From Macrostomum lignano (Eukaryota): a stretch of 64,000 nt of DNA. Each line of letters begins with the position of its first letter. Position 1 is the first letter of the stretch. A program made the translations under genes and the position numbers. The stretch lies in NCBI GenBank assembly GCA_002269645.1, contig NIVC01001520.1, forward strand, positions 124,001-188,000, read 5' to 3'. A model generated the notes under the pieces. It searched no databases. It saw only the letters and a program-made list of their open reading frames with translations, and was not told where the DNA came from. Below are positions 15,411 to 57,200 of this stretch, piece after piece.

Positions 15411-15794
15411 TCAGCTCTCCTAGCACTTTCAGCGGTATGGGAATGGCAGGATACTGAAAGCACACACAGGAAAAGTATCACAGGAAAGGCATAAAGTAAA
15501 AATTTAAATCGATCACAAATTAGTAGAAAAGTTTTGCTGCTTTCCGGTGACGATCTGAACAAAAGCTTCTTTAATTTAGGCTTTTTATAGGTAAAAAGCG
15601 ACAACACTTTTTGTCAGCGTCCGGTTCGTCTTCCGCTGTCAGCAACTTTACTTTTTGCTGAAGAAATTTCAGAGACTGCTTCATCCTTCTTACACAGTGT
15701 AGGGTGCAGTCTTTCAGGAAGGTAAGATTGCAAACAAAATTTTTTGAAATTCAGCCACGTTTCTTCTCAATCAAGGCATCGTTTCAGTCTCTTA

Positions 15795-16562: not shown

Positions 16563-17321
16563 TTCTCTGTGAAGTTCTAGACCCAGAGCGAAATTGTCAA
16601 TTAATCAACAATAAACGGAATAAAACACATTGTCGTCTGTCTAACAAAGGAGACGGTTTTAAAATCAACGAAAGTTTTTTTTATTTAAAAAAACCTTGTC
16701 AAGTCAAAACCGTTCTGGCGTCGCAAACTGGAGTGCCAAAAAGGAAGTTGAGAACTCTGAAGTTCAGACAAAGTTCAGAAATGTTTTGCAAGGAAATGCA
16801 AAAACACATTCGATGTTAAAACTGCCCCGTATCGGAGACTGGAAAGCAATAATTAAACATACGGAATTATGCCATAAAAGCGATTGAAGCACTCGTTGGG
16901 GAGGCAAAAGAGAAAGAATTTTTTTAAATAAACTACATGTAGGTTTTAGTTTTTTGCAGTTGCTATTGTTAATTTATTAAAGTTTGTTAATGCCACAGCA
17001 ATGCCACAGAAATTCCCCTTTCCATGAACCTTGACACTTCAACAATTCTCCCCATGAATCGCATCATTTCAGCGATCCCCCCATGAGTCCTACATCTAAG
17101 CAACTCACCCCGTGTGCACAGCATTTTAGCCATTACGCCCCATAAGCCTTGACATCTAAGCAATTGTCCCATGAGCCGTTTATGGTTGACAGGGCTATAC
17201 TTTTATGGTTGAATCCTGCTCTACCCAGTTGAGCGTCAGAATTTCATCAATACCCTATATCTCCTACGAGCCTTGGCCTCTTGGCAATTTCCCTTGAATC
17301 TTTTACGGTTGACATGACGCT

Positions 17322-18030
17322 TCTTTTTTGGTCATTTCATGGCTTCTTTTTTGGTCATTTCATGGCTTCTTTTTTGGTCATTTCATGGCTTCTTTTTTGG
17401 TCATTTCATGGCTTCTTTTTTGGTCATTTCATGGCTTCTTTTTTGGTCATTTCATGGCTTCTTTTTTGGTCATTTCATGGCTTCTTTTTTGGTCATTTCA
17501 TGGCTTCTTTTGTGGTCATTTCATGGCTTCTTTTATGGTCATTTCATGGCTTCTTTTATGGTCATTTCATGGCTTCTTTTATGGTCATTACATGGCTTCT
17601 TTTATGGACTTTCATGGCTTCCTTTATGACATGACGATTCTCTTATGTTTGACATGACGCTTCTTTATTGTTGACATGACGCTTCTTTATTGTTGACATG
17701 ACGCTTCTTTATTGTTGACATGACGCTTCTTTATTGTTGACATGACGCTTCTTTATTGTTGACATGACGCTTCTTTATTGTTGACATGACGCTTCTTTAT
17801 TGTTGACATGACGCTTCTTTATTGTTGACATGACGCTTCTTTATTGTTGACATGACGCTTCTTTATTGTTGACATGACGCTTCTTTATTGTTGACATGAC
17901 GCTTCTTTATTGTTGACATGACGCTTCTTTATTGTTGACATGACGCTTCTTTATTGTTGACATGACGCTTCTTTATTGTTGACATGACGCTTCTTTATTG
18001 TTGACATGACGCTTTTTTTAGAGTTGACAT
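17322..18030. repeat. Adjacent 23-bp (ggtcatttcatggcttctttttt) and 22-bp (gttgacatgacgcttctttatt) minisatellites
   Basis: Direct tandem units visible; the 23-bp array ends near 17625, the 22-bp array spans about 17640-18030. Confidence 0.95.
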
Positions 18031-18372
18031 GATGCATCGTTATGTTGCATACTGCGTTTTAGCTTCTACAAATAGTTGATATATTGCAACCAGGATTTTT
18101 GGCACCAATGAATCCTTCCCATGCTCCAAGGCCCAACAATAATTAGTATTTATTGAAAAACCCCAACGAAGGATAAGGGTTGCTGAGTCAGTCGATCCAT
18201 ACCTTAATCGTTCACGCTCAAGCGTTTCCCTCACACAATAGAGATTCTATCATTTATTTCCATCAGTTACTTAATAGAAGTTGTGATACGAGCTACAGCC
18301 AGCAGGAAGAGGTTATCAAGCGCGTTGGAGCATTAAAAGCAAAGTCGTCGGAGTTTCCACTGGGTCGGTTCG

Positions 18373-18450
18373 TTGCTACACAGATACAGTGCTGGTAGGA
18401 ATACGAGCTAATGCAGCAAATTGCTACACAGATACAGTGCTGGTAGGAAT
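18373..18450. repeat. 48-bp satellite, left remnant flanking the DIRS-like element
   Basis: Same unit as the 22006-22665 array (gctacacagatacagtgctggtaggaatacgagctaatgcagcaaatt). Confidence 0.9.
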
Positions 18451-21400
18451 GCTGGTAGGAGCCGCAGATCTTCCGGCTGCGCCTTGGCCCGGCCGAAGTA
18501 GCGCAGCAGAAACAGCAGCATGTGGCGGGGATGCGTCAGGCAGCGCGACAGCGGGTCGCTCAGCAGCTGCCAGGACCCCGGCATATGGTGAGCTCGAAAC
18601 TGAAAGTCGTGCCTCAGCGCTGCCAGAGTGGCCGTTTTTGAGCAGGGTCATGACGATCGGGTTGCTGGAGGCACCGCGGTTGATGGTGCCGACCGCCGCG
18701 CTGCTGTCGACGTAGCAGGCCACCTTGCCGCCGGCCAGCTGCTCCTGGAACAGAATGATGCCGAGCAGCGGCAGTACCGTCTCCTTGGCGTTGATGTGCT
18801 CGCTCAGGAAGATGCCACCGGCGTCACTGCAGAAGTCGACGAGGCGGAACTCGCGCTGGCCATCAGAGGTGCTCAGGATCATGCCACCGGCACTGACGCA
18901 GGCGTCCGTCTCGACCGCTGCCAGCACTCGTGCACGCCGCCACAGCTTGTCGGTCGGGAACACTGGGATTGCATGCTGCCAGAACTGCAACTGGGCCAGT
19001 AGCTCGCCGCGCACCGGTACTCGATGATGCTGCTCAGGAATAGCGATGGTTATCTCCAGGAGCGCGCGAAGCAGGGCCTTTGCAGGTTTGGCCACTTTGC
19101 AGAACCAGTTCAGTTTGCCGACTAGGTGCTGAAGGCGACGTTTTTGCAGGCTCTTCGAGTTGGCGCAGTCCTGGAGAAGTTCTCGAAGGCCGTCCATCTT
19201 CTTGGCGGGCAGTGACAGCAGGCCAGTCAATGTGTCGATCTGCACACCCAGGAAAGTGACCGAAGTGGCTGGGCTCTGCGTCTTGGCCCAGTTGATCTCA
19301 AAGCCGAGGCGCTGCAGTGTGGCCAGCAGAAAATTGTGCAGCTGCAGGCAGACTTCGTAGCCCTAGGCAGCTATGCAGAAATCGTCGAGGTATGCGATGA
19401 CGACGAATTTGGACAGATGCGAGAATTGCCTGTACATAAAGCGCTTGACAGCTTGCGTTAGGCGGTGGAAAATGTTGACTGATGCCGCCGCACCGAATGG
19501 GAGTCGCGTGTCAACCAGATAAGTGGGCTGACCGTCCAGCTCGAACGTCCACCGGAGCCCCGTCGCCTTATAGCAGTCTGGGTGCACCTGAACACTTCGG
19601 TAGGCGTGGCGTAGGTCGACCTTGCTGATGAACCAGCTTGGTGCCAGCTGCCTGGTGAGATCCTCGACATTGGCAAACTTCATCTTCTGGCGGGGCTTGT
19701 ACAGATCGTTGAGGCTGTTGCCCTGTGGCGCGGACGCGTCGTGAATCAGGCGGATGGCGCCGTCTGCCTTCGGGACGGCGCCCAGTGGGCTGATGATGGT
19801 CGGCCTGGCGATGCCCAAGTCAGTTGCGCTGATGTACCGGCCAGCCACGACCTCCTCTCTGATCTGCAGCTCAACGGCATTCCGATTTGCCTCGCAGCGG
19901 GCGGATGCATGATTTTCGAGCTGGGATTCGCTGGTCGGAGCCGCGTCGGTGATGCGAAAGCCATCGCGAATTCCCGCGATCAGAAACTCCGCGTCCGAGT
20001 CTCCGAGCAGGACTGGTGTCCAAGCAGCAGTTAACAGCGGCCAACGTTTTCGGAGTGCAGCCACCGGGCCGGCAACAGGGCCGGCAGCAGCGCCGGCAGC
20101 AGGACCGGCAGCAGGGCCGGCAGCGGGGCCGGCGGCAGGGCCGGCGGCAGGGCCAGCGGCTGGGCCGGCAGCAGGACCGGCGGCAGGGCCGGCGGCTGGG
20201 CCGGCAGCAGGACCGGCGGCAGGGCCGGCGGCTGGGCCGGCAGCAGGGCCGGCAGCAGGGCCGGCGGCTGGGCCGGCAGCAGGGCCGGCAGCAGGACCGG
20301 CAGCAGGGCCGGCAGCAGGACCGGCAGCAGGGCCGGCAGCAGGGCCGGCAGCAGGGCCGGCAGCAGGGCCGGCAGCAGGGCCGGCAGCAGGACTGGCAGC
20401 AGGGCCGGCAGCAGGACCGGCGGCAGGGCCGGCAGCAGGGCCGGCAGCAGGACCGGCAGCAGGAACGGCAGCAGGGCCGGCAGCAGGACCGGCAGCAGGA
20501 ACGGCAGCAGGACCGGCGGCAGGAACGGCAGCAGGGCCGGCAGCAGGACCGGCAGCAGGAACGGCAGCAGGACCGGCGGCAGGGCCGGCAGCAGGACCGG
20601 CAGCAGGGCCGGCAGCAGGACCGGCGGCAGGGCCGGCAGCAGGGCCGGCAGCAGGACCGGCAGCAGGAACGGCAGCAGGGCCGGCAGCAGGACCGGCAGC
20701 AGGAACGGCAGCAGGGCCGGCAGCAGGGCGAGTGGCATGGCGAGCGGCAGGGCGAGCGGCAGGGCGAGCGGCAGGGCGAGTGGCAGGTCGAGCGGCAAGG
20801 CGAGTGGCAGGGCGAGCGGCAGGGCCAGTGGCAGTGCGAGCAGCTGTCTCGCATGGAATTAAAATTTTGGACTGTCTATCAGACGCCGTCCGCTTAGGGC
20901 TAAAACTGGTGCCGCCGCGACCCGCCTCTTTGCTCAGTTTTTTGATTCGGCAGCCACCGAGCTGTGTTGCAGCTTTGAGTGGCTCCCTTCGCAGATGCGG
21001 CAGATGTGGGCGAAATTGCAGGTGTGTCTGTGACAGCCTTTGTTGCTATTGAACAAGCCGCAGATGACCTGTCCAGCGGATGACAGCTGGCCCCTGCTAC
21101 GGTGACCCTGGACTCCTTGACCGACCGCGACTGGGCCAGCAGCTCGCAGGTTTTTGGGCGCCGTCATATGCTTGATGATGAGGTTCAGATCGGGGCTGTC
21201 CCAGTCGCGCTGTCGCGAGTGCTGCTGCAGCCTCATGTCCTGGTCGTACTGGAGCACCACCTTCCAGTCGTAGCCAGCGTCGAGCAGCTCGCCGATGTGG
21301 ATGTTAAAGTTGAGGTAGGCGTTCAGACTCTTGCAGTCGGGCTGTCCATCCGTACCGGGCGCCACCAGCTGGCCGGTCTCCAGCAGTCGCTGCATGATCC

Positions 21401-27312: not shown

Positions 27313-40638
<13,326 letters not shown>

Positions 40639-41146: not shown

Positions 41147-41500
41147 TTAGAAGTCGGTGAGTCGCTGCGTTGGGTAAGTCTGAAATGAAATGAAAAATCA
41201 AGGCCAGTAATGTATGAATTATTAAATGCATTCAAGAAGTGCCTAGGATTGTTTTCTTAACTCACCAAAATGCTCGGCTCCAATGCATAGCCATACTTAA
41301 TCATCTCGATGGACACGTTGGGCCGAACAAAGACTACAGAGCAGTTGTACGGCGGCTGAAATTATTATTAGGGTTAGGGTTGTAAAATATATACTACAAT
41401 ACCGGACCAAGATAAAATGCATCCTTAATACTAGCTAGTAGTAATGTAGTAGTAGTAGTAGTAGCAGTAGTAGTAGTAGTAGAAGTAGTGGTAATAGTAT

Positions 41501-41551
<51 letters not shown>

Positions 41552-41643
41552 AAGTAGTAGTAGTAGTGGTAATAGTAGTAGTAGTAGTAGTAGCAGTAGT
41601 AGTAGTAGTAGAAGTAGTGGTAATAGTATTAGTAGTAGTATTC

Positions 41644-41703
<60 letters not shown>

Positions 41704-41752
41704 GTATTCGTAGTAGTAGTAGAAGTAGTAGTAGTAGTAGTAGAAGTGGTAA

Positions 41753-41845
<93 letters not shown>

Positions 41846-44832
41846 CAGCAGTCTTAAATGTCTCGTACTAGGAATGCCTATGAATCTATTAACAAAGCGT
41901 GTATGCCTTAATGCGTGTCTGCACATTGCTTGCAATAGTTTGTTTACCTCGTCCAGCAAAGTGCGCACAATTTGCACCGCCTTCGGCTCTGAGCTGTTCG
42001 TCATCAAATCGCAGAAAAAATTGCTAGCCGCCTCGCTCCACTGGCCGTTCGCATCCGTCGGCTTCAAACAGTCCAGATAGGCCAACGCCGTCAACTGACT
42101 GCAGGCGTCGGCAAATTGCCGCTTCAGATAATACAGATCCGTTAGGCTGACAATTTCTGAGCCGCTAGGCGGCTCGTCTAACGGCCGGACTCGAACCCGG
42201 CCGGCCCGGGGAGCGCCGTCGAATCCGAGCGCTTGGACGCGGATTAGTCGGCCATTGGCGCCGCCCAGTCTGGCAGCGCACAGCAGACCGCCTGTGGCTG
42301 CGTGACGACGTGAGATCGGCTGCCAATCAGCGCAAGCTTTCATGTCGGCTTGGAGGCGTCGGCGCTGTTCGTCTAGCCGGCTGCTATGCACAGAGAGCAG
42401 CAGGTCGTCTGGGCAAGTGGCCTTCACGCTCACCTGTGAAGGTAGTGTAATACTGTAATATAGTAGCTATTGTACTTGCAGCCATGCACCTACATGTACA
42501 GGGCTATTGAGACACCTAGTAGGGCGGTTAGACAGCGACTCTGGAGTCTGGTAGATTCTAATGAGTCTGGTGGACTCTGATGAGTCTGGTGGATTCTGAT
42601 GAGGCTGGTCGATTCTGAAGAGTCTGGTAGATTCTAATGAGTCTGGTGGACTCTGATGAGTCTGGTGGATTCTGATGAGTCTGGTGGATTCTGAAGAGGC
42701 TAGTGGATTCTGAAGAGGCTAGTGGATTCTGAAGAGTCTGGTGGATTCTGATGAGTTTGGTGGATTCTGAAGAGTCTGGTGGATTCTGATGAGTTTGGTG
42801 GATTCTGAAGAGTCTGGTGGATTCTGATGAGTTTGGTGGATTCTGAAGAGTCTGGTGGATTCTGATGAGTTTGGTGGATTCTGATGAGTCTGGTAGATTC
42901 TTATGAGTTTGGTGGATTCTGAAGAGTCTGGTGGATTCTGATGAGTCTGGTAGATTTTGATGAGTTTGGTGTATTCTGAAGAGTCTGGTGGATTTGTACG
43001 ATATAGAGTAAAAGCAAGTCCAACTTACCCTGACAGTGCCAGTATTCGGATCGGCATATTCCGCTACAGGCAGCGGCTGCAGCTGGCAGCCAATGGGTAC
43101 ACAGTCGGCCGGAATTCCGTTACTACCACTGTCCCCGTCGCCGTACGTAGACCAGGTGTCGCTCCGATCCAATTCGCTAATGCATGTATTGGTCATGGAC
43201 TTCAGACCAACGGACGAGACGTCGCCGCCGCCGCCAGACGATGAAGACGAGGACAAAGGCGGCAGAGGTGGTGAATACAACTGTAGATTTTGCAAAGGTT
43301 GATGCAGCTCTTGAGGAAGCTTCGGTAGCTGCTCGTCTTCGGGCAGTTGCTGCAGTGGCTGCTGCTTGATACAGTTAGCCGGCAATTCGTTGCTGAAAAG
43401 CATAACGCATCGACTGCCGTCAATTTGACTGTCGAGCCTGACATGAACCTAACGTAAACTCATATCCTTAACCATAACGCTACTAACCTAACCTAAACCC
43501 TATAACCTAAAATCTAAAACGTAGATTTCACACACGATTTTTCCCTAAGTAAAACATAAAAACAAAAAATTTATCTAGGTTGATTCATAATAAAAATTCG
43601 TAATAACAACAATATAATTAATTACACCTGCCCTACTGGGCAGTTTTGCAACAGACAGCTCAGCCCTAGCTAATTCAGGGTGAACTGAAGCAATGCAGAG
43701 TTAAGTGTCTTGCTCAAGGACACAAATTGTTCCAAGTGAGTTGAGAATCGAACCCCCGACCTTTCCTGCGTGAGTCCGACGCTCTGACCACTAGGCCACA
43801 ACCCCTAGCCTATGGGTTTAGTTAAGTAAATAAATAAGGTTAAATACATTAAACGGACTCCTAAATAGCTGTAATTGATGACATTGCCATTGAAATGCTT
43901 TGGGAATCAGGATGCAAAAATGGCACTCGGATTTCTGATGAAAAAATCCGCAGATAATTAAATATGACTCACCTAGCAGGCGGTGCTGGTCGCAGGCTGT
44001 CGGCCAACTGTACCAGCGGACAGGCGCCTAATCGAGGCACCAGTCGCAGTCGCTTCTCCGCCTTTACCATCGCGTCGAAGCTGAGAAATCCCAGCTGCCG
44101 ACAGGGCTCGAAGCCGTACTGGGAGCAATAGGCCTCGGATAGCTGATCCAGTGGCGCCGGGCCGTCAGGCCAGTTGGCCACCATATTGACCAGTTTATCG
44201 GAGTTCGGGTCGGTGACGTACAGGCCAGATTTAGCCGGCATCAGCCTGTGGTCGCCATTAGGCGTCTCAATGATGTCAATGACGCCGCAAGATTGCAGGA
44301 ATCGCATAAATGATAGCATAGAATTGCAGGCAAACTGGTCTAGACGCAGTACAAAACCGTAACGTTGAAAATAAAGCCCGCCAAAGTGACCTAAACTGCA
44401 GCCTTCGCCGTTTTTAGCAAAGAATTCTTCAACTAATTTGGCTATACGATTTCGCACCTGTTGCGGACAGCTGGGATTCCGATTGGCCGACTTTTTTTGA
44501 AAGCTAAAGCGACTTTTACCGCCGCGACAGCTTTTATTTTCTGTGTTAATTTTCTCGATAATGCGTTTGGAAGCATGGTTGGGCGGCTGGGTGCTTTTAG
44601 CGCACATGTTGGCGCCCACTCTGTACATCGTCAGAGTGCCTGGCAGTGCAACTCTGATTAGCTCTTCAACGCTGCTAAAACCGTGTTCACGAAATGGCAC
44701 CGGATGACCCATAGTTCTCTCGTAGGCTTCGGCTAACGATTGAAGAGTCACGTGACTGCCCGACTTGGTTGCCAGGACGTGAATAGAAGCTGAAAATACG
44801 CTTTTGATAACTTCAATGCTTGTAGGAGCCAT
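41147..44832 (-). CDS. LOTUS (x3) + extended Tudor protein, TDRD5/TDRD7 (Tejas/Tapas)-like; exons 44832-43973, 43437-43029, 42433-41948, 41355-41266, 41179-41147 (1878 nt)
   Basis: LOTUS-like YERTMGHPVPFREHGFSSVEELI, YFQRYGFVL..CNSMLSFM, YCSQYGFEPCRQLGFLSFDAMV; eTudor pattern (CAARL..LIRVQ..VRVRPLD..LYYLKRQF..AYLDCLKP..WSEAASNFF..NVSIEMIKYGYA); GT-AG phases consistent, total length divisible by 3. Confidence 0.8.
41440..41848. repeat. (GTA)n microsatellite in TDRD5-like intron 3
   Basis: Direct inspection; the poly-Leu/poly-Val ORFs are artefacts. Confidence 0.95.
42540..42990. repeat. 19-bp minisatellite in TDRD5-like intron 2
   Basis: Unit gattctgatgagtctggtg. Confidence 0.95.
43623..43809 (-). 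mobile_element. tRNA-derived SINE, copy 1
   Basis: Minus-strand A box TGGCCTAGTGG (43798-43788) and B box GGTTCGATTC (43754-43745); body gggtgaactgaagcaatgcagagttaagtgtcttgctcaagg shared with copy 2. Confidence 0.75.
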
Positions 44833-47439
44833 CCCAATTGGTTTGTTGGTTCATGAATTGGAATATTGCCATTGTAGTGCCAGATTACAAAGCACAATTA
44901 GGAATAACCTGATGGCAGACAAGGGAATCAAAGATAAGTTCTTTAGCTTAATTTACCCATATGACATATTGCAGCCAAATTAACATGGATCACATACATC
45001 TCTATGAATTGACATAAAGAGGATATGCAAAAAGGTAATAGAAAGCCTAAAAATCAGTCAACAATTAGAGATGGAGTATTAGAGATTAGAGTAATTCCTA
45101 AATTTTAAGAAGTATTGATTTCATAACCATATATGTTTTGTCTAAGAACCTATATATCTATAACTTTCAATAGCAATATCTGTATCTACAATGGAGCTCT
45201 ATATAAATAGTTTTGGTTGCAACTATGTGAAAACAAATTTTGGCTTAACTATAATACTATATAATCTATCTCTATTAGGTCTTATATCACCTTCACCTAA
45301 CAATTATTACTATGACACTAGCAAAAACTCTAGCCATATTGATTTTGCATATATGGGACCATTATATAGAACATTCCAATGATCATGAGATAAATAGGCC
45401 TAGGATAATTGGCAATCTTTCAGATAATAATTACCAAGTAAATTGACTATCACCTTAATAACAGTTTTAAATAAATAAAGTAGAAGCTCTTAAAATAACA
45501 TTACAAATGGTTTCTAGTATTAGCTCTTTTATAAATTAGCACTTTCCCTTGTGGCTTATATGTTATATCAGTTTTGGATAAAATCAATTCAAATATTAAA
45601 ATTGTCCTAAAATGATCATATTTTAAAAATATAATAACTTTGTATATTTCGCATCTGGACTCTATATATTTAGAGAAATAGGGTCACATTGAGCTTTAAA
45701 CCACTTGCACAGATGTCTCAAATGAACTGGCTCTATTGAATAAGACCTCAGCTTTAATTCTACATATAAACATAGGCCTAATACAAAAAACTATAGGTTA
45801 AAAAGTAGAATGTAATATGTATCCCCCTGAATTTTGAAGATAGGCCTAATCATTTCAATATTACTAGTCTATAGTATAGACTCTATAGACTCTATACAAA
45901 TGATTATTAATTGAAAGTATAATAAATATTTTTGTGGAATATTTAATATATACTTGATGCAATACCTAATTATATCTATTAGAATAGAAGAGGTTGAAGC
46001 ATTTTATTTTTAATTGTTTTTAGCAGTTTTGGAACATGATCATTTTTTTCTAAAAGTTTCATAGAAATGATTGCCTTTTAAAACAAATAATATATAGACT
46101 GACTATTTAAATGATATAAATATTATAGGTTATTCTATTAGAATAGAACTAAATTATTAGGATATCAAAAATACTTTTATAAAATAGAGTCAAATTTCAA
46201 TGGTGATTGTCTATTGAAATTGATATATTAAGCAATGATGATCATTTAAAAGAATAGGCCTATTAGACAATTATATAACTATTATTATCAAATCAAAAGT
46301 TAAGACAAAAACTTTTGGCTAAATAATTTGCCTTTGGCAAATCAATTGGCTAGCTATTTTTATTGATATTCATTAATAGTTCAATAGGCCTGCCTAGTAA
46401 ATTTTAATTGCATGTTTTTAAATATAGAGTACTTAAGCATAGCAGCCATGTCTAGTCTATAATATTTATGCTTATAGGCACAGCTATAATCATTGATATA
46501 AAATGTGTGTTCTATAAGGCTCTCTCATAATCAAATGGTGGCTTAGTGGATAAGATGATTGTCTTGTGATTGCATATAGCAAGGTTTGAATCCTAAGTGG
46601 TTGTAGTTTTTTTTTAATTTGAATTTTTTTTAGCAAATAGAAATTTTTGTGTCTTAAACTTTTTAAGTTTTTTAATTAATGACTGACTGACTGACTGACC
46701 ATACATGCGCAACCTTCAAAATTTGGTCATCCATGCAACTTAGTTTTAACAAAAATGCGACATAGTTTTTGGCCAAAAATGCAACTAACATATAAAAAAC
46801 CCTAGCATAAGTAGTGTAAAGCAAAATTAACGCTACTATAGGTAGGGACTTCAATGAGGCAAAATTATCCCGTTCAAAATTGTAAAAATGGCAAAAAGGG
46901 CCTATCTTTCTACACTTATAACTATTAAAAGGAGTAAAGTGTGAAGTAAAGTTAATATACTTTGAAAAGGCAACATTTTTTTCTTTCAAATAAGACCAGC
47001 TTTATTGAAAACCATTGATTTATTACAAAGCTATACTTACTCAAAGTTTTGCTTTCTTTTCAAAAAAAAATGTATGTGTGACGGTTGCAAAAAATGCACA
47101 TGTTTCGGAATTTGAATTTTTCTAAGAAATGCATCATTTTTTACGCAATGAAACGATTGTAATACAAAGGGAATACATTAGAGAACATTTTAAAGACTTT
47201 TCAGCCATATTTGTTATTATGCAAGTAGGAGAAAAACATGTTTTTTTTAGTTTTTATCATTTTACTCACTGAAGCTCCATAGCGCCGCAGTTCTCCCATA
47301 GCTAATCAGACGCCCACATTTGTTAGCTACAAGACGAAAAAAGAATCATGAAAATCGGTTGCTGCGCAATGCTGCGCGAGCAGTTTAAAGTCAGCCATCC
47401 CATTTGTGATCAAAGTAGGTTTTGCCCTTGAATCATTAG

Positions 47440-47887
47440 GGCAATCATGAACTTTCCCGCGTTTAATTATTTTTTATCTTGTTCGTAAATTTCCAGCTTT
47501 GAAGACATTGAAGACATGGCCGGAAGACCTGCCGCACCAACAACTATAGTCGAGCCAGCCGATGTTCTTCCTGCCATTGAGCTGACCGAGTTGGACCTCA
47601 ACCACCGTGAGCTGGCCCTGCTGACGGATGACACAGCAGTCCAGTGGCTGGCACGGCACGGACTTCTGCGGAACAGCATCGACTGCCCGAACTGTGCCAC
47701 CGCAATGTCCTATTCTGGATCTGCCACTACTACCCCTGCTGACTGTGACTCTTTATTAACTAATAATCGTGGTACCTAGTGTTTTTTATGCCCCTGAACT
47801 TTAATAATACTAATTTTCATCACCCCGCACTTAAAGGTTACGAACAAGATAAAAAAATAATTAAACGCGGGAAAGTTCATGATCGCC
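47440..47887 (+). mobile_element. Merlin/IS1016-like internal-deletion derivative nested in the 46700-49764 element
   Basis: ~48-bp TIRs (ggcaatcatgaactttcccgcgtttaatt...cgtaa), 7-bp flanking repeat tcattag, and a transposase N-terminal remnant VQWLARHGLLRNSIDCPNCATAM. Confidence 0.75.
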
Positions 47888-48005
47888 TCATTAGTTTGTC
47901 ATTCGGCTGTTTTTCTACTTGACCATTATGATTATAACCGATGCTTGCATTTTAGGCAGCTTGCACATGCTTTCGTGCATTTCAGAAGCGATCAGGTTTC
48001 GGGGA

Positions 48006-48954
48006 TTAATCGTCATCCTCTAGCATGTTCAGATCACCAGCGTAGAAGTCCGAGTACAGGTTGTACTCGAATCTTTCTCCAGGGAAATTGTCGAACTCGA
48101 CCTCAAACATCCTGGACAGGATGTCCAAGTTCCGAGCCGTCGGCAACTCGCGGATGACGGCGCCCTCTTCCCACTGCTCCCCATCGGCATACAAGAACTT
48201 CACTTCAATTCTTCGTCCAGGCAGCTCTGGGCAGGACTCGAGCGTCCGAACTGTGGTTTCAGGAGCCTCGTCTGCAGCATCGTCATCGTCCTGAATTCTC
48301 CATCCTCGTCCCCTGCCTCTACCGCGTCCTCGGCCACGTCCTCGGCCGCGTCCTCGGCCACATCCTCGGCTGCGTCCTCGGCTGCGTCCTCGCTGAGGCG
48401 CCGGCGGCTGGACCTCACGTGGCTTCAGCTTCTTGGCCACCAGCTCACGGACTCTTGCGCTACATTCTTGGGGCGGCAGAACGTCTCCAGACGCAGAAGT
48501 GGAGGCAGAAGGGACAAGCTCCTGCTCTTGAGCATTCAGGATGTCAAGGAGCTCCCCAGCTGATCCTGAAGCTGAGCTGTGCTGTGCTGCCTGCCTCTCT
48601 CCGAGAAGTGCAGCAGCGTAACCTTGCCTGGTGGCAGCGGAGCCTCTAAAATGTGTTAAATAAATTGCTTAGAATAGATAGCAAAATAGTCCCATGTATT
48701 CGTAGCTTACGCATGGCCTTGTGAAGTCGAAGCTGGGCTTTCACAGCCTGCTCGACGCTGTTGGCCGCGAGGGATGGGATGACCGCATTGTATAAGGGCC
48801 AAGTTGCTTCTGTCTGCTTAGGAGCAATGGCAGCCTCAATGACTCCAACTTCCAGCTGCTGCTGGTTGAGGGCAGCCTGAACAGCCATGCGGCCACCACT
48901 CTTAAACAGATCAAGAGCAGCCCCAATTGTCATGGAAGCTGGTAGGTCAGACAT
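48006..48954 (-). CDS. Transposon-borne gene: N-terminal region of unknown function + RG tract + C-terminal Spindlin/Ssty-like Tudor domain; exons ~48954-48711 and 48645-48006, one -1 frameshift near 48555
   Basis: 65-nt GT-AG intron (48710-48646) splices in phase; GRRIEVKF..DGEQWEEGAVI..FEVEFD..PGERFEYNLYSDFYAGDLNML resembles Spindlin repeat 2; start codon choice uncertain. Confidence 0.65.
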
Positions 48955-50717
48955 GCTGCCAAGTGCTAGGCTGGAAAGTAAACTTAAGGGTAAAGCCAAG
49001 GTATATCAAACAAGACTATGTAAGCTTTTAAAAGCATTATCATTAAGACAGTTACAGTTGTATGTCAGTTGAATTAATTCTGAATGCTGAAAAGTTGTTA
49101 TATCTTATCATTTATATATAAATGCAATATTACTGCAATATTAGGTAGTGGCTATGTCATATGCATTCATGGATTATATGTATTCTTATATCAAAAAGTG
49201 TGCCCAATGAAAAGTCTTTTTTAGCTATAAAAATTTGAAAAAAATGGGAAAAAATAAGACCTCTGGCAACAAAATCCATCAAGAAATAAAAAAATTATAG
49301 CAAATTGATTTTCAAAAGTTACATAATCTCCGAAAAATGATCACAGTGCCCTATGGAAAAAATACATTACGAGCTAGTACAAAAAATGTAGCACAAAATG
49401 TACCATAACTTTTTTAATACCCAACCAATTTTTATAAATGAAATGTCACCATGCTCATAAAGCATGGATCTATATGATGAAGTACAAAAAATGGCCTAAT
49501 TTTTAGTTTTAAAAACCTCACTGAAGTCCCTACTATAGGTAAACGGTAGGAGTAACTATGACTTTACTATGACTATAGTTATAGACTATGACTATGACTA
49601 ATAAGACATAACTATGACTATGTCTTATTAAGTCAAAATGCCTCGTCAGCTACATAGTACTACTACTTTGGTATTTTTTGGGTGGGCACTTTTGCAACTT
49701 CCTTGTTTGGCCGCCAAATTGGTCAGCCAAATCAGCCGACTTGGCCAACTGTTGTGCATGTATGTGACTGACTGACTGACTTTTTTAGTAGCTACATATA
49801 TTATTATTGCAGCTGCACTTTAAAAAAAGATTTTGTGTTATTCTTAAAATTAAAATTAATTTAATTTAAAAAATTCAAATAAAAAACTTTGACTTTTCAA
49901 TTGATTGATCTTTTCATTTGATCAATGATTATATACATGGCATGGCAGCCATGCCCATAAGCTCTAATATTAGAGACATGGCCACCCACCATGTTTTTAA
50001 GTGTAAATCAATTCCATATTCATGACACAACCATCCACTATGTCTCTAAATATGAACCCATTCAATATTAATGACATGGCTACCGTGCAAGTTTCATTGA
50101 CACAGTGGCCATGTCTAATAGTGACTAGGTCTATTTATAGACATAGCAGCCGTGTCTATAATGCAAATACTTATTTGAATTTTTGACACAGCCGCTTTCA
50201 TAAGTAGGCCGTGTTTTATTTGAATTTCTTTCAAGCTTTTAACAAACATTTTTACTTAAAAACATTATTCACGAAAAATCAGCCTAAATATCAGACAACG
50301 GTCGTTTATTCTGTAAAACAAACACACCAACTTAAAAGACAGAGAATTGAAAAAACAAAACAATTATATTTAAATCATACGAAAGTCTCCGTCCCCGCAC
50401 CACCTGACCTGACCTGATCACTCGATTGCAGTCTCACGTCAGAAGCGTGGACGTGTGGCTGTTGAACGTTTGCAGATTTTTGCTGATTTAATTATATGAA
50501 ACTGGCGTTTTCTTAATAAGAAAAGTCCATCTCTTTTATTGCCATTTTTATTCCTTTCTTAAAATGAGAACGCATTAATTGATCATTTTAGTTAGGCCTA
50601 GCATTTCTCGTTTCAGCTTTGTGCCTTGGCTTTAGTTCACAAGTCAAAAGTTTTTTATAGATAAAGAGTTTAAACACTACAAGCAACTTTCTTATTTTAT
50701 CTTTTGAGGAATTCAGA

Positions 50718-53700
50718 ATGGTAAGTTAGGGCCTAAGTTGAAACTGGTAAAGTTTTAAATGGTAAATTAAACTAAATAATCATTCAGTCTAATTATGTTT
50801 ATCATCCTTGTCAGACTATGTTTTATCCATTCTTAGAAATTGAAAGCAAATGAAAGTAATTTAAACGAAAAACTTTGTCCTTAATTACATAAATAAACCA
50901 TCAAAGCTAGTTCACATATGCTTCACTTACGACTATTGCCTAATTATCTTTTCATTGTTAGTGACAACTTTTATAGCAGCTATAAAAATATCTCATTTAA
51001 CTAGCATAATTTATTACGGCAGTTATTGTATGGCTAACTTTAATTATACGAGAAATAGTTTTAAATTGCATAAAAAATTAATTCCAGATGCTATCTATTT
51101 GATTGTTAATCGATGTACATGTAAAACTTTATGCAAGTGATATTATTTGTTTGCAAATTTAAGCACACATATGACTGGGAATTTTTATTGCGTACAAAAA
51201 TGCTGCATTGTATAGTATTTAAGTGAAAAATATATTATTAAGTAGACTTACTGCATGGTCTATTCCCTAACTTGACATATTTTTAAAGACAATTTCTAAA
51301 ATATTTTTAGATTCATTTATGCTACTGTTCAGCAGGCAGGGTAAACTTCGACTACAAAAGTGGTACATCTCTCAGACGGACAAGGCAAAAAAGAAGATCA
51401 CTCGAGATTTGGTCACTCTTATTCTTGCTAGAAAACCAAAGATGTGCTCCTTTTTAGAGTGGAAAGAGTTGAAGATTGTGTATAAAAGGCAAGGACACAC
51501 AATACCACTGTCAGCGTCATTCTCAGATATCGCATATTTAAAAAACTCTTCATGCCATTGGTACTTTTACAGATACGCGAGTCTCTATTTCTGCTGCGCT
51601 ATTGAACAGCAGGACAATGAGCTTCTCTGTCTCGAAGTCATACATCGCTATGTTGAACTTCTTGATAAGTACTTTGGAAGCGTAAGTGCTCGTACTCAAT
51701 GTACTATTCAGAAGTAGATTGACTTTGTGTTTTTTATATACAAACAAAACAGGCTTGATTTAACTTCTACAGGTCTGCGAGCTGGACATTATATTTAACT
51801 TTGAGAAAGCCTACTTTATGCTGGACGAGTTTATACTAGGCGGTGAGGTTCAGGAGACAAGCAAAAAGAACGTGTTGAAGGCCATCGCCGCGCAGGATCT
51901 GTTGCAGGAGGTAAATTCTTAATTATCAAGGATGTTTTTTGTACAGTGCTTGCACTCCAAAAGTGCTTCTTATGTTTGCTTGATTCAATAAATGCTTCTT
52001 GTTTATTTTTAATTAACAACGAATGAGAAACATAGCAAAAATCTAACATGCACATTCATTGCTGTATGCTTATTTTTTGCATTTAACTTTTGCGTTTAGC
52101 TTTGTCCAACTCTGCTGTTTTGACTGTCTCAAATGGAATTCAGGTGTCTCACAAGTGTCTCAGATGTTTAAACAATGTAGATCACACATGGATTTCAGGT
52201 GTCTCATATTCCTGGAATTTTCCTTGCACACACAATAGGAGTTAAGATGTCTTACTTGGCGATTTCAGGTGTCTCACAATGGATTTCAGGTGTCTCACAA
52301 TGGATTTCAGCTGTCTCACATTGGATTTCAGCTGTCTCACAATGGATTTCAGCTGTCTCACAATGGATTTCAGCTGTCTCACAATGGATTTCAGCTGTCT
52401 CACAATGGATTTCAGCTGTCTCACAATGGATTTCAGCTGCCACACAGGGGATTTCAGGTGTCTCAAGATGGATTTAATGTGTCCACAGGGAATTTCAGGT
52501 GTCTTACGATGGATTTCGGGTGTCTCACAATGGATTTCAGGTGCCTCACAATGAATTTCACTGCCAATCCTAATATTCCACATGGTAAATGAAGAATGTG
52601 CTTTTAGAAAGTTCAGTAGTATTTCGCGATTAGTTCAAACTTAGCAGAGAACTGTTAAGAATTAAGCCATTTAGGACACTAAGCCACTAGGACGGAAGCT
52701 AGTAGGACTGTCCTTCCGCGCAACCAAATTCAATTCAATAAGCGACTCAACCGCCCTCCAATAAATCTAGAACGATGCCCTTTTGGAAGCGCTAAAAGAA
52801 TACGGATTGATTTAACCGAGTTGCAAGAACGCCATCATGCGATTCTCTATGCATAAGTCTACTATATAGTACTATATAGAACGAGCGAAAATATTTGCGT
52901 TATCGCAAGCCGAATTATTACTCAGAAATTTGTTTCTTTGTCAGTGTTAGAAGATCCTTGTCTTTGTTATTTCCTGACAGTTCTATATAAACTGTTTGTC
53001 ACTATACTATTAATTATATGGCTGCCAATCCTAAACTGACAAATTCACTTATTTTCAACACGATGCACCGCATTGATGATGTTGATTTTGTACTGTATCC
53101 CACCTTCACGTGCATTCAGCATCAATTTCATTTATATAAGTACTGTCAACTGACTTCTATAAAAAATCTAAACCATTTTGTTAAAACTTTCAGCTATATT
53201 TTGCTAGAATTTTAAGTCCGAATATTGCAGTATTAGCGACTCGTACGAGATTAAACAAATCGAAGATACGACACAGATTTATTTTGAATAATCGGTTTTA
53301 ATGACGTGTTTTTTTGAAAGTTGAATCTAAACAAATTAAACTTTGGTATATCACTTATTATATTATGCTTATAGTTTCTGTCAGATTGACTGTCTCGATC
53401 CAAATGCTCGTAAAATGTGTTTTACCTACCTGCCAATTGCCCTTAAATGTAACTTAATGAGAAATGGAATCTGCACATTCTCGGTCGGGATCTCGCAAGC
53501 TGGTTTCTCAATTTTCAACAGCTTCAATTTTTGAACAAATAGCTGACATTCCTTTTACCCGATTGTACGTGTCTAGGTATTAATAAAAATATTAATGTGT
53601 TTCAATAATCATTATTAGTGGAGTTCAATTACCTAGCAATAAAAGTAACAATATTTGTGTCACCTATTTCTAATCACGCCCGATTGTGTGATCATTTCCA

Positions 53701-54200: not shown

Positions 54201-57200
54201 GTTCCTCTTTGCGTGGTTGAACTTTTACTTGTTTACAAAAAGTTAAGGCATTGATCGTAGTTTTAACTAAAAAGCCAAAAAATCATTTCGGATCAGTTTG
54301 ATGTATCTACTAGCAAGATATTACTTGTTTAGTAGCATTGCAGTAATAAGAATAAGATTAGGATTCGTATTACAGTATTGTGTAGCTTATTAACAGCTAC
54401 AAGTGTGGAATATAATATTTACACGCTTTTAAGATAGAAGCAATTCAAGCTTGTATAATGAGTCTCTTTCTTAAAACACTCGCTGCAATTTTGGTTGGAA
54501 GTTTAATCTTTTTATATTGATTTCCTGTTGTCGCTAACTGTTATCAGTAGCTCTAGTTTTCATCATATTTTACGCCCTAGTCATCAGTTTTATTTAGCTA
54601 TACATGCTTCCTATCAATAAGATTTATTGGTTGTGTTATCTCTTTTTTAAGGCTTTTAAGCAGCTCTCGCGAATAATACGAGTTACTTACAAAAGTCACG
54701 TTGCAAAATGGGGACTACAAAAAATCTATCGCGTTTTGCGTCTCCAGATGAATTCTTAAGTTCGTTAAATATATGATCCCTTTTTATGGCTTATCTATAG
54801 TGTAGCCCAGTAGAATATTGAATGCATTTTAATCGATATTATTAAGCGTATTTTTCCCATATCTCTACTATCAGTAAAATATCAAATAAAAGTTCTTTAT
54901 GAATAATTTTATACATGTAATATTCTGTAATTTTTACTGTAAGTAAAGTAGCAAGCGCATGCTCTTTATTCTGATTGCCATTCTATCAATAAACGTATAC
55001 GAAATAAAATATTATACTAGCTTGCTCTTCTCTGCTCAACAATGCAGTCTTCCTGATCGATTCTTCCCCTGGTTAATCTCTCTAAGCCTCTCTCTAGTTC
55101 TGATGAGTAGCTTTTTAGACAAATAAAATTACTCAAATTAAATTAATCGCTGGATTTATTTGATTAAAACAAAATTCAGACAGAAAATCTGCCCCATGCT
55201 CTGTTTTAATCGTTGATTTTCCCGTATGAAGAGAATTGTTTTTTGTCTGAGACGAGCCCAGTAGTTACTCGTCGCGTTTAATTGGCTCTTTCAAATTACG
55301 AGTATTAAACTCGATTTGTTTAGCGATTTTATCAGACTTAAGCCAGACGTATGTATGGCTATGTTGTTTCTGGGAATTTTCGTCTCAAGCTTCCAGGTGT
55401 TTCTCTGTAACCATTTTTTACCTCACAATACACGCCCCACTGGTATTATTGTTAAGTTGTTTTCTTTGAGCTGCAAAGAATGATAACAATTGATTTTTGG
55501 ACAATGGTGTCTTAAACAAGCGGAAATTCTTCGAGTTTTAGTTTTATTTAATTCTTTTTTTGCTTGGTTAAATAGCAGCTGTGGAATTATCAATAGAATA
55601 TATTTTATGAGCACACAAGCGCGCCAGTGCTGTAGGCAGGCACGCACTCACGCACACGCTCACACAGGGTGTACAGCGGCCCTGACTGTCTAATCGCCAG
55701 GCATGTACACTCTGTGTGCCATGGGGGTTGGCCTGCTCTGCATAAAATAACTTACCTAGTGTTACCTAGCGGACAGCTTGCTTCTATATATTGAGCCAGC
55801 TGTGTGGTAATCCACCCGTGTGTGTGTCTAGAATCAAATCAACCTGCAATTGCTGCCAAACAGCCGGCAGCCCAGCTCCCTTTCTGCACCGCCCACATCT
55901 CGGCTCCCCAGCTAACCCCGCAATCCGCCCTAGCTTTCTCCTCCTTCTCCCCCCCCCTTTCTGGAGGACTCAAGTAAGGAGTCAATTAATTAATGAGTCT
56001 GGCTGAGTCATCTCGCATGCTTGGGGAGCCAAAGAACTCCTGGGCTCCTGCGGAGGCCGCTTCAGCAGGCCTGAAATAAAGTAAATGAAGCGATGCCCTA
56101 GGTCGGCCGTGAATCATTAATGCAGAATCCACATTGTTACAGCATATAAATGTACTGCAGTGTATATACCGACTATGCGCTTGTTCGGTTAACATATTTT
56201 TGTTTGACTACCATATATGGCTGGGTCTAAATTGTTTTTATACTGCTTTGAGTAACACTTCAAAATTATGGCAAGCCTATGATTGTATATTGAAAATTAT
56301 ATTTCTATCCATAGAGTAATAGTTTTTATTTCGACTAGTCTTGCGCATCACGCTGACCCCTGAGCACGCGGGGTGTACCAGCGGCCCTAATTTTCTCAAA
56401 GTCAGGCATGTAACACACTGCGCCGTTAATAATCATGGATGAGAATCGCACGACAATTTCTGAGCACAATCGCCAAATGTATGTGGCTGCTCACGGAATC
56501 GAACCCTTGGCACACTGCCCGCGATCTCGCTAGTGTATTCCGAAGCAGAATTGGGGCCTTCAAATAATTCCCCATCATCTTGAAATGTTACGCGTCCTTC
56601 TTCTGTATGCTGCAATGAAAAGCAGATGTGTAGCAGAAAAGCACTCAGTTGCTGAGGACACCGCATCATGCAGCATCTCTCGCATCTCCCTGGGAAGTTG
56701 CTAACTCAAAGGGGCGTGCGTGATCATAAATTTGAGTCGGGACTGTCTATCAGCCTCCGCTATGCGCGCGGCGGCATACAGTCTTAGCCACTATATAGCT
56801 ATATCCTTATTTTGGCCGAGTCCAGTCCGCCGGACAGCCAGAAGCTGCGATGATAGAAAAGTCGAGGAAGAAAACTCGGACGGCCAAGACAGAGAAGTCA
56901 TAAATATTCAGCCAAGTAGTGCATTCGCTGCCCCCGCTGCCTGCCCCTTCAATTCCTTTTTCTTCTCCGAGCTCTCACGCCTCTCTCCCCATTTTAATCC
57001 CGCCGATTGCCTCGGCTTTCGTAATCCCGGGGGGTCTCTCGCGGGGCAGGGAGGCCGGGTGGGAGCTGGAGAATGGGAGGGGGAGAGTATTAGGAAATAA
57101 AGTCAAATTCGAAACGACCTCGCTCCGCGCTGTTCCGCCGAACAATCGGCACCTCACATACAGAGAAAATGCCTGCGCCTAATTCTGCTGAAAATAAAAT

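What the first reader, a model, noticed from the sequence alone, without database searches (positions are those of the whole stretch)
46700..49764. Microsatellite-inserted TIR transposon carrying a spliced gene for an RG-tract + Spindlin-like methyl-histone reader
Seen: 14-bp TIRs with tgac on both sides inside (GACT)n enclose an intron-containing gene whose C-terminus matches Spindlin Tudor-like repeat 2. Recalled from SPIN1: the aromatic cage F141/W151/Y170/Y177 reads H3K4me3; here the equivalent positions appear to be F/W/F/F, with the following Y, D and GDL retained. An (RG)n tract, a typical PRMT substrate, precedes it. No DDE catalytic core is visible. Inference: a non-autonomous element with a chromatin-reading accessory protein that could steer integration or counter silencing.
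Basis: partly seen in the sequence, partly recalled or inferred. Interest (0 to 1): 0.8.

Follow-up and report, generated by a model that had tools for sequence, protein, structure and literature searches.

The report
Dead transposon copy with Spindlin-like tail
This flatworm locus is three DNA transposons nested inside one another, and the "gene" is the broken C-terminal stub of one element's own putative transposase, whose family ends in a Spindlin-like methyl-histone reader domain that may steer where the element inserts.

Summary
The 14-nt inverted repeats (13/14) abut the only two (TGAC)n arrays in the window. There is an (RG)n tract. The C-terminal domain is Spindlin-like: a 7-sequence profile hits SPIN1 repeat 2 (E=2e-8), and an AlphaFold model (pLDDT 85) has Spindlin1-4 as its top 44 Foldseek hits. 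The cage positions read F/W/F/F.

The gene lies in an inner element (46843-49532) with its own TIR, TAGGGACTYYARTGAG, and a perfect 7-bp target-site duplication (CTATAGG). A second Macrostomum lignano locus has the same TIR and a different perfect 7-bp duplication. The 14-nt TIRs belong to an outer shell of about 366 bp sitting in the microsatellite. A third element of 448 bp is nested inside.

Full-length relatives (about 900-1000 aa, three sources) carry conserved D, D, CxxH and E motifs, an RG-rich linker in two of the three, and the same Spindlin-like C-terminus. The window gene is therefore the last two exons of the family's putative transposase, not an accessory gene. Spliced at the conserved 65-nt intron, it stops at residue 117 because of a 1-nt deficit in a G run. 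The catalytic part matches no Pfam or PDB family, so the superfamily is unresolved. Reader-guided integration is an inference.

The parts
46680..46699 (+). (TGAC)5, left half of the interrupted microsatellite; includes the target-site duplication of the outer element
49765..49781 (+). (TGAC)4.25, right half of the interrupted microsatellite, in the same phase as the left half (so the TSD is 4 or 8 nt)
46700..46713 (+). Left 14-nt TIR of the outer shell element (CATACATGCGCAAC). The outer shell is 46700-46835 plus 49540-49764, about 366 bp with one TSD copy.
   Evidence: (I21)
49751..49764 (-). Right 14-nt TIR of the outer shell element (reverse complement CATACATGCACAAC)
   Evidence: (I21)
46836..46842 (+). 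7-bp target-site duplication CTATAGG of the inner element (left copy)
   Evidence: read directly; compare L001 TSD TCTAAGA
49533..49539 (+). 7-bp target-site duplication CTATAGG of the inner element (right copy)
46843..49532 (-). Inner element, 2690 bp: an internally deleted, non-autonomous copy of the Spindlin-tail transposon family. The gene is on the minus strand.
   Evidence: I6; I7
46843..46858 (+). Inner TIR at the gene's 3' side (TAGGGACTTCAATGAG)
49517..49532 (-). Inner TIR at the gene's 5' side (TAGGGACTTCAGTGAG)
49333..49516 (-). 5' subterminal region. Together with the adjoining TIR (window 49333-49532) it is 72% identical to L001 9217-9416.
48711..48954 (-). Penultimate exon remnant. 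Its last ~25 codons (…SVEQAVKAQLRLHKAM) are homologous to the full-length protein; the first ~58 codons have no homolog.
48646..48710 (-). Conserved 65-nt GT..AG intron, phase 1, at the same position as in the L001 full-length gene
48006..48645 (-). Last exon: linker, RG tract, acidic stretch, Spindlin-like domain, stop codon
48552..48559 (-). CTGGGGAG: a 1-nt deficit in the G run shifts the ancestral frame and gives a stop at codon 118. It is either a real mutation or a homopolymer assembly error.
48303..48392 (-). (RG)n tract, encoded by a 12-nt tandem repeat of 5.9 copies
   Evidence: (D1)
48021..48230 (-). Single Spindlin-repeat-2-like Tudor barrel (GRRIEVKF…GDLNML)
47440..47887 (.). Third, innermost element of 448 bp, with 49-nt near-perfect TIRs and a 7-bp TSD TCATTAG (47433-47439 / 47888-47894). 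It carries an 87-aa ORF fragment (47516-47779, plus strand).
   Evidence: (I1, I5)

Best explanation
What it is (shown). The locus is a three-layer nest of cut-and-paste DNA transposons in a Macrostomum lignano-type flatworm genome.

- Layer 1: a shell of about 366 bp with 14-nt TIRs inserted into a (TGAC)n microsatellite.
- Layer 2: a 2690-bp element (46843-49532) with TIR TAGGGACTYYARTGAG inserted into layer 1 and duplicated the 7 bp CTATAGG.
- Layer 3: a 448-bp element with 49-nt TIRs inserted downstream of the gene and duplicated TCATTAG.

Layer 2 is an internally deleted copy of a family whose full-length members encode a multi-exon protein of about 900-1000 aa. That protein has an N-terminal coiled coil, then a core with invariant (H/M)TDGT(T/S)KK, M(S/T)DR..VN, CG(L/M)H..N, RGNR.Y.IF, AGCRAL, R.LW and N...ER(I/M)F motifs. 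This is a D, D, CxxH, long insertion, E layout. An RG-rich linker follows in two of the three full-length members, and then one Spindlin-like Tudor barrel. The window copy keeps only the last two exons (about 235 homologous residues) and is frameshifted in the ancestral frame.

How it most likely works (inferred). The full-length protein is the family's transposase. It binds the TAGGGA… ends, excises the element and reinserts it with a 7-bp staggered cut. Deleted copies such as this one move only when a full-length copy supplies the enzyme in trans. The C-terminal barrel keeps the SPIN1 repeat-2 cage (F/W/F/F plus Y and D). It probably tethers the transpososome to a methylated histone tail, H3K4me3-like, and so biases insertion towards particular chromatin. 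The RG tract is a flexible, possibly arginine-methylated, nucleic-acid- or Tudor-binding linker. The truncated product of this copy is most likely not functional.
For: Nesting and ends:
- The motif TAGGGACTYYARTGAG occurs in the window only as the inverted pair 46843/49532.
- In L001 (M. lignano NIVC01003425.1) the same pair flanks the paralogous gene P0002.
- Both pairs are flanked by perfect 7/7 direct repeats, CTATAGG in the window and TCTAAGA in L001.
- The 200 nt inside the 5' TIR are 72% identical between the two loci.
- The contig carrying the 907-aa relative P0009 (L002) has a related TIR, TAGGGATGCCACTGAG (I7).

The gene is a transposase C-terminus:
- tblastn finds a full-length homologue in L001 at 13850-18107, minus strand.
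- P0009, L001-full and L003+P0003 align over their whole length with the listed invariant motifs.
- The repaired window protein, aa 59-293, matches L001-full aa 764-1015 at 41% identity, E=2e-33.
- Intron position and phase are conserved.

Spindlin-like fold:
- Profile versus PDB, E=2e-8 to SPIN1 residues 131-195.
- AF2 pLDDT 84.7.
- Foldseek top 44 hits are all Spindlin1-4, TMq 0.55-0.72 (most 0.66-0.72), best-fitting chains rmsd about 2 A.
- Cage alignment; cage residues from PMC8213585.

Decay:
- Frameshift in the window copy.
- Frame hops in P0001, seen by comparing.
- Frameshift before the RG tract in L001-full.

Motif class: the C/DxxH motif after the second D is shared by hAT, P, MuDR, Kolobok and Dada (PMC3706591).
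Against: - The catalytic identity of the large protein is not demonstrated. There is no Pfam, NCBIfam or PDB sequence match for that part, and the AF2 model of the core failed (pLDDT 40).
- Ends of the full-length L001 copy could not be defined.
- Copy number in the genome could not be measured because no flatworm genome was searchable.
- The outer 14-nt TIR was seen only once.
- The fourth cage position (Y177) varies across the family: F/H/F/Y/F/G/Y/V.
- Histone binding and targeting are untested.
- The frameshift could be an assembly error. A 67-nt alternative splice keeps a 293-aa ORF open, so expression of a truncated protein is not excluded.
Confidence: 0.75

Rival explanations
1. One reading: one TIR transposon bounded by the 14-nt repeats, targeting (TGAC)n, that carries a captured or accessory chromatin-reader gene.
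For: The 14-nt TIRs exactly abut the only two (TGAC)n arrays. The whole unit could in principle be mobilised through its outer ends.
Against: An inner TIR pair with its own perfect 7-bp TSD encloses the gene. The same inner TIR plus gene recurs in L001 without the 14-nt TIR or (TGAC)n; hits there only at 3 mismatches, as expected by chance. The gene is collinear with the C-terminus of the family's large protein, so it is not captured cargo.
Confidence: 0.05
2. The truncated protein is made and functions. For example, it could be a catalytically dead competitor or repressor of the family's transposase (as KP or the 66-kDa repressor are for the P element). It could be a decoy for Tudor or PRMT factors of the silencing machinery. 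Or it could be a host gene in the process of domestication.
For: A 293-aa ORF stays open with a 67-nt GT..AG intron. The Spindlin-like domain and RG tract are intact in this copy. The frameshift lies in a G homopolymer and could be an assembly error. P0001 is 91-97% identical, so amplification was recent.
Against: With the conserved intron the frame stops at residue 117. Sister copies P0001 and L001-full also carry frame disruptions. No expression data exist. The exact protein is in no database. The first 58 residues have no homologue.
Confidence: 0.13
3. The large P0009-like protein is not a transposase. It would be a host or other mobile-element protein family that happens to lie next to MITE-like repeats, and the Spindlin-like tail would be ordinary host chromatin biology.
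For: No recognised transposase domain was found by Pfam, NCBIfam or PDB. The ends of the full-length L001 copy were not found.
Against: Two independent gene fragments lie precisely between homologous TIRs with perfect TSDs. A related TIR lies on the P0009 contig from a different organism. The invariant D, D, CxxH and ER.F residues have spacing typical of the C/DxxH transposase group. There are multiple decayed copies per genome.
Confidence: 0.05

Closest known systems
Spindlin-1 (SPIN1) Tudor-like repeat 2, Spin/Ssty family
   Same: Same barrel fold (Foldseek TMq about 0.7). The profile matches residues 131-195. Cage positions F141, W151, Y170 and Y177 are aromatic here (F/W/F/F), and Y179, D184 and GDL are kept (PMC8213585).
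   Different: There is one repeat instead of three tandem repeats. It is fused to the C-terminus of a mobile-element protein behind an RG tract. It falls below Pfam PF02513 detection as a single sequence. H139 is replaced (V here). The Y177 position is not conserved across the family.
Chromoviruses (Ty3/gypsy LTR retrotransposons with a C-terminal integrase chromodomain)
   Same: A methyl-histone reader barrel at the extreme C-terminus of the integrating enzyme. In chromoviruses it directs integration to marked chromatin (Gao et al. 2008, as cited in PMC6839031).
   Different: Different element class (cut-and-paste TIR element versus LTR retrotransposon). Different reader fold family (Spindlin-like Tudor versus chromodomain). 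Targeting is not shown here.
RAG1/RAG2 recombinase, derived from Transib/ProtoRAG (own knowledge)
   Same: A transposase-derived DDE machine coupled to an H3K4me3 reader (the RAG2 PHD finger) that links cleavage to active chromatin.
   Different: TIR/RSS sequences and the 5-bp TSD differ. No homology was detected.
hAT superfamily (Ac, hobo, Tam3, Hermes)
   Same: The TIR starts TAGGGA, and the L002 TIR TAGGGATG equals the start of the Ac TIR (own knowledge). There is a CxxH after the second D, about 310 aa between the second D and the E, and the E lies in an (S/G)ER(I/M)F motif near the C-terminal part of the core, which resembles the hAT dimerisation motif (own knowledge). Introns and Ds-like internal-deletion derivatives are present.
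   Different: The TSD is 7 bp, not about 8 (PMC3706591). There is no hit to any hAT Pfam model or to Hermes in PDB. No BED or zinc-finger N-terminus was seen.
P superfamily (P element, Galileo, 1360)
   Same: Galileo has a 7-bp TSD (PMC4168063). It also has a C/DxxH motif, a large insertion domain and an N-terminal coiled coil (own knowledge).
   Different: No THAP or P-transposase Pfam match. The TIR sequence is unrelated. The TSDs here do not fit the GTANTAC palindrome.

Membership tests
Spin/Ssty (Spindlin) domain family | Tudor-like beta-barrel superimposable on a Spindlin repeat | tested here: met
   AF2 model pLDDT 84.7. Foldseek PDB top 44 hits are all Spindlin1-4, TMq 0.55-0.72 (most 0.66-0.72), best-fitting chains rmsd about 2 A; SGF29 comes next.
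Spin/Ssty (Spindlin) domain family | Significant sequence match to the family | tested here: inconclusive
   A 7-sequence profile hits SPIN1 repeat 2 at E=2e-8. No single member reaches Pfam PF02513 at E<=1 or 10, and single-sequence phmmer against PDB finds nothing.
Spin/Ssty (Spindlin) domain family | Three tandem repeats forming the Spindlin triple barrel | tested here: not met
   Only one repeat is present in every family member.
Spin/Ssty (Spindlin) domain family | Aromatic cage of repeat 2 (F141, W151, Y170, Y177) plus D184 | tested here: met
   Window copy reads F, W, F, F, D. W and D are invariant in the family. The Y177 position is variable.
Spin/Ssty (Spindlin) domain family | Binding of methyl-lysine or methyl-arginine histone peptides | not testable with these tools
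   Needs a peptide array or ITC.
Non-autonomous (internally deleted) TIR DNA transposon | TIRs plus TSD, no catalytic ORF, and a related full-length element encoding the enzyme | tested here: met
   TIR pair plus perfect 7-bp TSD at two loci. Only the C-terminal ~235 aa are retained. Full-length homologues exist in L001, L002 and L003. That the enzyme is a transposase is inferred.
hAT superfamily | 8-bp TSD | tested here: not met
   7/7 perfect repeats at both loci. The 8th position mismatches in both.
hAT superfamily | TIR beginning YARNG | tested here: met
   TAGGG at all six ends seen. The consensus itself is from own knowledge.
hAT superfamily | hAT catalytic and dimerisation domains recognisable (Pfam Dimer_Tnp_hAT and others; Hermes-like fold) | tested here: not met
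   No Pfam or PDB hit. The AF2 core model is unusable. Only motif-level resemblance (CxxH, ER.F).
P superfamily | 7-8-bp TSD | tested here: met
   7 bp. Galileo has 7 bp (PMC4168063).
P superfamily | THAP DNA-binding domain and P-type transposase domains | tested here: not met
   No Pfam hit in P0009 or L001-full.
C/DxxH group of DDE transposases (hAT, P, MuDR, Kolobok, Dada) | D, then D, then C/DxxH, then E, conserved in order | tested here: inconclusive
   D298, D380, C420/H423 and E690 (P0009 numbering) are invariant in the two or three members that cover them. Catalytic roles are assigned by pattern only (PMC3706591).
Microsatellite-targeting transposon (outer shell) | Repeated independent insertions in the same microsatellite type | not testable with these tools
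   Only one copy of the 14-nt TIR pair was seen. No flatworm genome was searchable.

The most novel reading that the evidence does not exclude
The P0009/L001-type protein would define a so far undescribed lineage, possibly a superfamily, of C/DxxH-type cut-and-paste transposases in flatworms and other aquatic animals. In this reading its C-terminal Spindlin-like barrel reads a histone methyl mark such as H3K4me3 to choose integration sites. Its SmD1/PIWI-like RG tail would be arginine-methylated and engage host Tudor proteins. Spin/Ssty repeats would then be a module exchanged between mobile elements and host chromatin readers.
Probability: 0.2. Interest if true: 0.75.

Novelty: new variant of a known kind. 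Interest (0 to 1): 0.5.

Why it matters
Reader-domain tethering is a well-known targeting device of LTR retrotransposons and retroviruses. It is echoed in RAG2. It is hardly documented for eukaryotic cut-and-paste transposases.

This family fuses a Spindlin-type methyl-histone reader and an RG tail to the enzyme itself. It has defined TIRs and a 7-bp TSD, and it occurs in a flatworm in which transgenesis is established (PMC5730564). That would allow a direct test of chromatin-guided DNA transposition. It would also extend the Spin/Ssty fold beyond host Spindlins.

The locus in the window is an ordinary decayed, nested, non-autonomous copy. Its value is as the pointer to the family.

Tried and rejected
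Searches that found nothing:
- Single-sequence Pfam and PDB searches of the window protein and of its halves gave only RG low-complexity hits.
- The word-indexed homologue search found P0001 only for the window protein. For the profile A3 it found P0004/6/7 only. For P0009 it found nothing new.
- Exact look-ups of P0001 and of the window ORF found nothing on record.
- BLAST of the element against the rest of the window found no other copy.
- A metagenome scan with the full-length alignment found no relatives.
- Profile searches of the catalytic part against PDB (A6, A10), Pfam and NCBIfam found no transposase match.
- ARAGORN and Rfam found nothing in the window.
- Literature searches found no prior report of a transposase with a Spindlin-like domain, within the held library only.

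Attempts that failed:
- AF2 of the P0009 core with a 2-row alignment gave pLDDT 40 and was not used for Foldseek.
- A search for the ends of the full-length L001 copy gave only degenerate TIR-like sequences at 12360 and about 18655-18671, without a matching TSD.

Readings I dropped:
- An earlier parse of the inner ends as a 5-bp TSD with the TIR starting one base earlier. The 7-bp parse gives longer perfect repeats at both loci and a TAG start.
- (TGAC)n as part of the outer TIR. The arrays are direct repeats, not inverted ones.

Full report
**1. Check of the observation**

The region 46400-50100 was read directly.

- The inverted pair CATACATGCGCAAC (46700-46713) and GTTGTGCATGTATG (49751-49764) matches at 13 of 14 positions (I21).
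- Its outer edges touch (TGAC)5 at 46680-46699 and (TGAC)4.25 at 49765-49781.
- These are the only (TGAC)3 runs in the whole 64 kb. None of 100 shuffles gives as many.
- The 14-mer by itself is not rare. A reverse-complement match with at most one mismatch, placed exactly at both array edges, has a chance of about 1.6e-7 (my arithmetic). The arrangement is real.
- The arrays are direct repeats and meet the element in the same phase. They are therefore an interrupted microsatellite that includes a target duplication of 4 or 8 nt. They are not part of the TIR.

**2. The gene model**

On the minus strand there are two open segments: 49005-48649 and 48668-48009.

- A 67-nt GT..AG intron gives an open 293-aa ORF.
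- Comparison with relatives shows that the 65-nt intron is the authentic one. The full-length paralogue in L001 has an intron at the same codon and in the same phase: …LRLHKCT|K|MVLPKDK… against …LRLHKAM|Q|APLPPGK….
- The residues that follow, in that frame, are the homologous ones (LPPGKVTLLHFSERG…AQLQDQLG against LPAGKAVLLQFSVQG…AQLQEQLL in P0002).
- The break is a 1-nt deficit in a G run at about 48552-48559. Adding one G restores a 294-aa ancestral ORF.
- This copy is therefore frameshifted, or the assembly has a homopolymer error.
- The RG tract is encoded by 5.9 copies of a 12-nt tandem repeat.

**3. The Spindlin claim**

- Single-sequence Pfam and PDB searches see only the RG tract.
- An exhaustive HMMER search with the C-terminal 94 aa found 11 proteins at E<=0.001. 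Seven of them share a domain of about 70 aa.
- A profile of seven members (A3) hits Spindlin-1 residues 131-195, which is repeat 2, at E=2e-8. It also hits Spindlin-3 and -4.
- An AlphaFold model built from that alignment has pLDDT 84.7.
- Its 44 best Foldseek PDB matches are all Spindlin1-4 (TMq 0.55-0.72, most 0.66-0.72; rmsd about 2 A over ~72 columns for the best-fitting chains). SGF29 Tudor comes next.
- In the alignment, SPIN1 F141, W151, Y170, Y177, Y179 and D184 correspond to F, W, F, F, Y and D in the window. The cage residues are as listed in PMC8213585.
- W and D are invariant in the family. The Y177 position is variable.
There is only one repeat, not three.

**4. What element carries the gene**

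The closest proteins are from Macrostomum lignano: P0001 (UniRef A0A1I8FLH2, 91-97% identical) and P0002 (PAA51465.1). The window is therefore from this flatworm or a close relative.

The genomic locus of P0002 is L001 (NIVC01003425.1). There the gene is flanked by the inverted pair TAGGGACTCCAGTGAG (9217-9232) and CTCACTAAAGTCCCTA (12188-12203) (I7, 42).

The window has the same motif as an inverted pair at 46843-46858 and 49517-49532, and nowhere else. These lie inside the 14-nt TIRs.

Both pairs are bordered by perfect 7-bp direct repeats:
- CTATAGG in the window (46836-42 and 49533-39);
- TCTAAGA in L001 (9210-16 and 12204-10).

The 200 nt inside the gene-proximal TIR are 72% identical between the two loci. 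L001 has no copy of the 14-nt TIR and no (TGAC)n.

So the gene-bearing mobile unit is the inner 2690-bp element. The 14-nt TIRs bound a separate shell of about 366 bp into which the inner element jumped.

A third element lies between the gene and the inner 3' end. It spans 47440-47887, has 49-nt near-perfect TIRs, and has a 7-bp TSD, TCATTAG.

**5. What the gene is**

- tblastn with the 907-aa relative P0009 finds a multi-exon full-length homologue in L001 at 13850-18107, minus strand.
- Three members align over their full length at 31-37% identity: P0009 (ENA metagenome contig L002), the L001 gene, and L003+P0003 (JGI metagenome).
- Invariant blocks, in order: (H/M)TDGT(T/S)KK; M(S/T)DR..VN; CG(L/M)H..N; RGNR.Y.IF.N; AGCRAL; R.LW; MN..Y; DHL(E/D)GG.L..LS; N...ER(I/M)F..LD.
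- After these come an RG-rich linker (in two of the three) and the Spindlin-like domain (in all three).
- The repaired window protein, residues 59-293, aligns with residues 764-1015 of the L001 protein (41% identity, E=2e-33). Nothing in the window matches the upstream 760 residues.
- The window gene is therefore the C-terminal stub left by an internal deletion. This is the usual origin of non-autonomous DNA transposons.
- The P0009 contig carries a related TIR, TAGGGATGCCACTGAG, 3.5 kb downstream of the gene. This links the protein family to the TIR family in a second organism.
- Sister copies are also decayed. P0001 hops between the three frames of the window sequence. L001-full has a frameshift just before its RG tract.

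**6. Mechanism**

Shown:
- nested insertions, each with a TSD;
- a family with shared TIRs;
- an element-encoded large protein with a Spindlin-like C-terminus;
- this copy lacks the core and is frameshifted.

Inferred:
- The large protein is the transposase. Its invariant D298, D380, C420xxH423 and E690 (P0009 numbering) follow the order and spacing of the C/DxxH group of DDE transposases (hAT, P, MuDR, Kolobok, Dada; PMC3706591).
- The TAGGG start of the TIR and the ER.F motif resemble hAT (own knowledge).
- The 7-bp TSD fits Galileo of the P superfamily (PMC4168063) better than the ~8 bp of hAT.
- No Pfam, NCBIfam or PDB model matches the core, and the structure prediction of the core failed. 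The superfamily stays open.
- The reader domain most plausibly tethers the transposase to methylated histone tails and biases integration. This is by analogy with chromodomain integrases (Gao et al. 2008, via PMC6839031) and with the RAG2 PHD finger (own knowledge).
- The RG tract resembles the SmD1 tail. It may be a PRMT substrate or a nucleic-acid-binding linker.
- The truncated product of this copy is probably not functional. A repressor or decoy role is the main rival.

**7. Comparison and novelty**

- The fold is Spindlin-like. The protein is not a Spindlin: it has one repeat and a different context.
- The element is an ordinary deletion derivative in an ordinary nest.
- What I could not find described, within the held library only, is a cut-and-paste transposase with a Spindlin-type reader and an RG tail, and with a core that current domain libraries do not recognise.
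- I rate it a new variant of a known kind, that is, reader-tethered mobile elements.

**8. Verdict**

- The family-level lead is moderately interesting, while this particular locus is a dead copy.
- Interest: 0.5.

Noticed in passing
window 47440-47887 (TSD 47433-47439 / 47888-47894): A 448-bp element with 49-nt near-perfect TIRs (GGCAATCATGAAC…) and a 7-bp TSD, TCATTAG. Its 87-aa ORF fragment (47516-47779, plus strand) contains …AVQWLARHGLLRNSIDCPNC…. From memory this resembles the N-terminal zinc-ribbon of IS1595/Merlin-type transposases. Pfam and NCBIfam gave no hit.
   Followed up: partly
L002 6414-6446: Two TIR copies abut head to head as a perfect 33-nt palindrome: CTCAGTGGCATCCCTA c TAGGGATGCCACTGAG. 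This could be two adjacent elements, an alternative-transposition product, or an assembly join. It is unexplained.
   Followed up: no
L001 8784-8802 and 12360-12378: Extra degenerate copies of the 5' TIR plus about 40 nt (TACAGACTCCAGTGAGATT and TAGACTGTCCAGTGAGATT), in the same orientation as the one at 9217. This suggests a cluster of fragments of this family around the full-length gene.
   Followed up: partly
L001 3400-5700: A 766-aa ORF with DUF1258, DUF4218 and a weak Transposase_21 (tnp2) match. This looks like a CACTA/KDZ-like transposase gene next to the locus.
   Followed up: partly
L001 18789-19026 / 20331-20568: A 238-nt inverted repeat, 92% complementary, 1.3 kb apart. This is another TIR or foldback element.
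   Followed up: no
window 55646-55727 vs L001 10772-10857: An 86-nt stretch, 78% identical, is shared between the window and the region just downstream of P0002 in L001. It is probably another dispersed repeat.
   Followed up: no
window 46520-46600: A tRNA-like stretch (…GGTTTGAATCC…, followed by a T run) lies just upstream of the (TGAC)n array. ARAGORN and Rfam are negative. It may be a SINE or tRNA-derived repeat.
   Followed up: partly
window 5621-7845; 18424-20064; 27313-36203; 41435-44832; 51319-51717: Other ORFs, named here from reading the translations only. They look like a non-LTR reverse-transcriptase element, a second RT-bearing element, an MCM2-like gene with introns full of minisatellites, a LOTUS/Tudor-type gene, and an AP-complex sigma subunit exon.
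   Followed up: no
L001 14230-14330 (minus strand): The full-length paralogue changes frame in a C5 run just before its RG tract. As a result, the annotated 940-aa NCBI product ends without the Spindlin-like domain. Both disruptions examined at the sequence level (window G run, L001 C run) lie at homopolymers, which is compatible with long-read assembly errors.
   Followed up: partly
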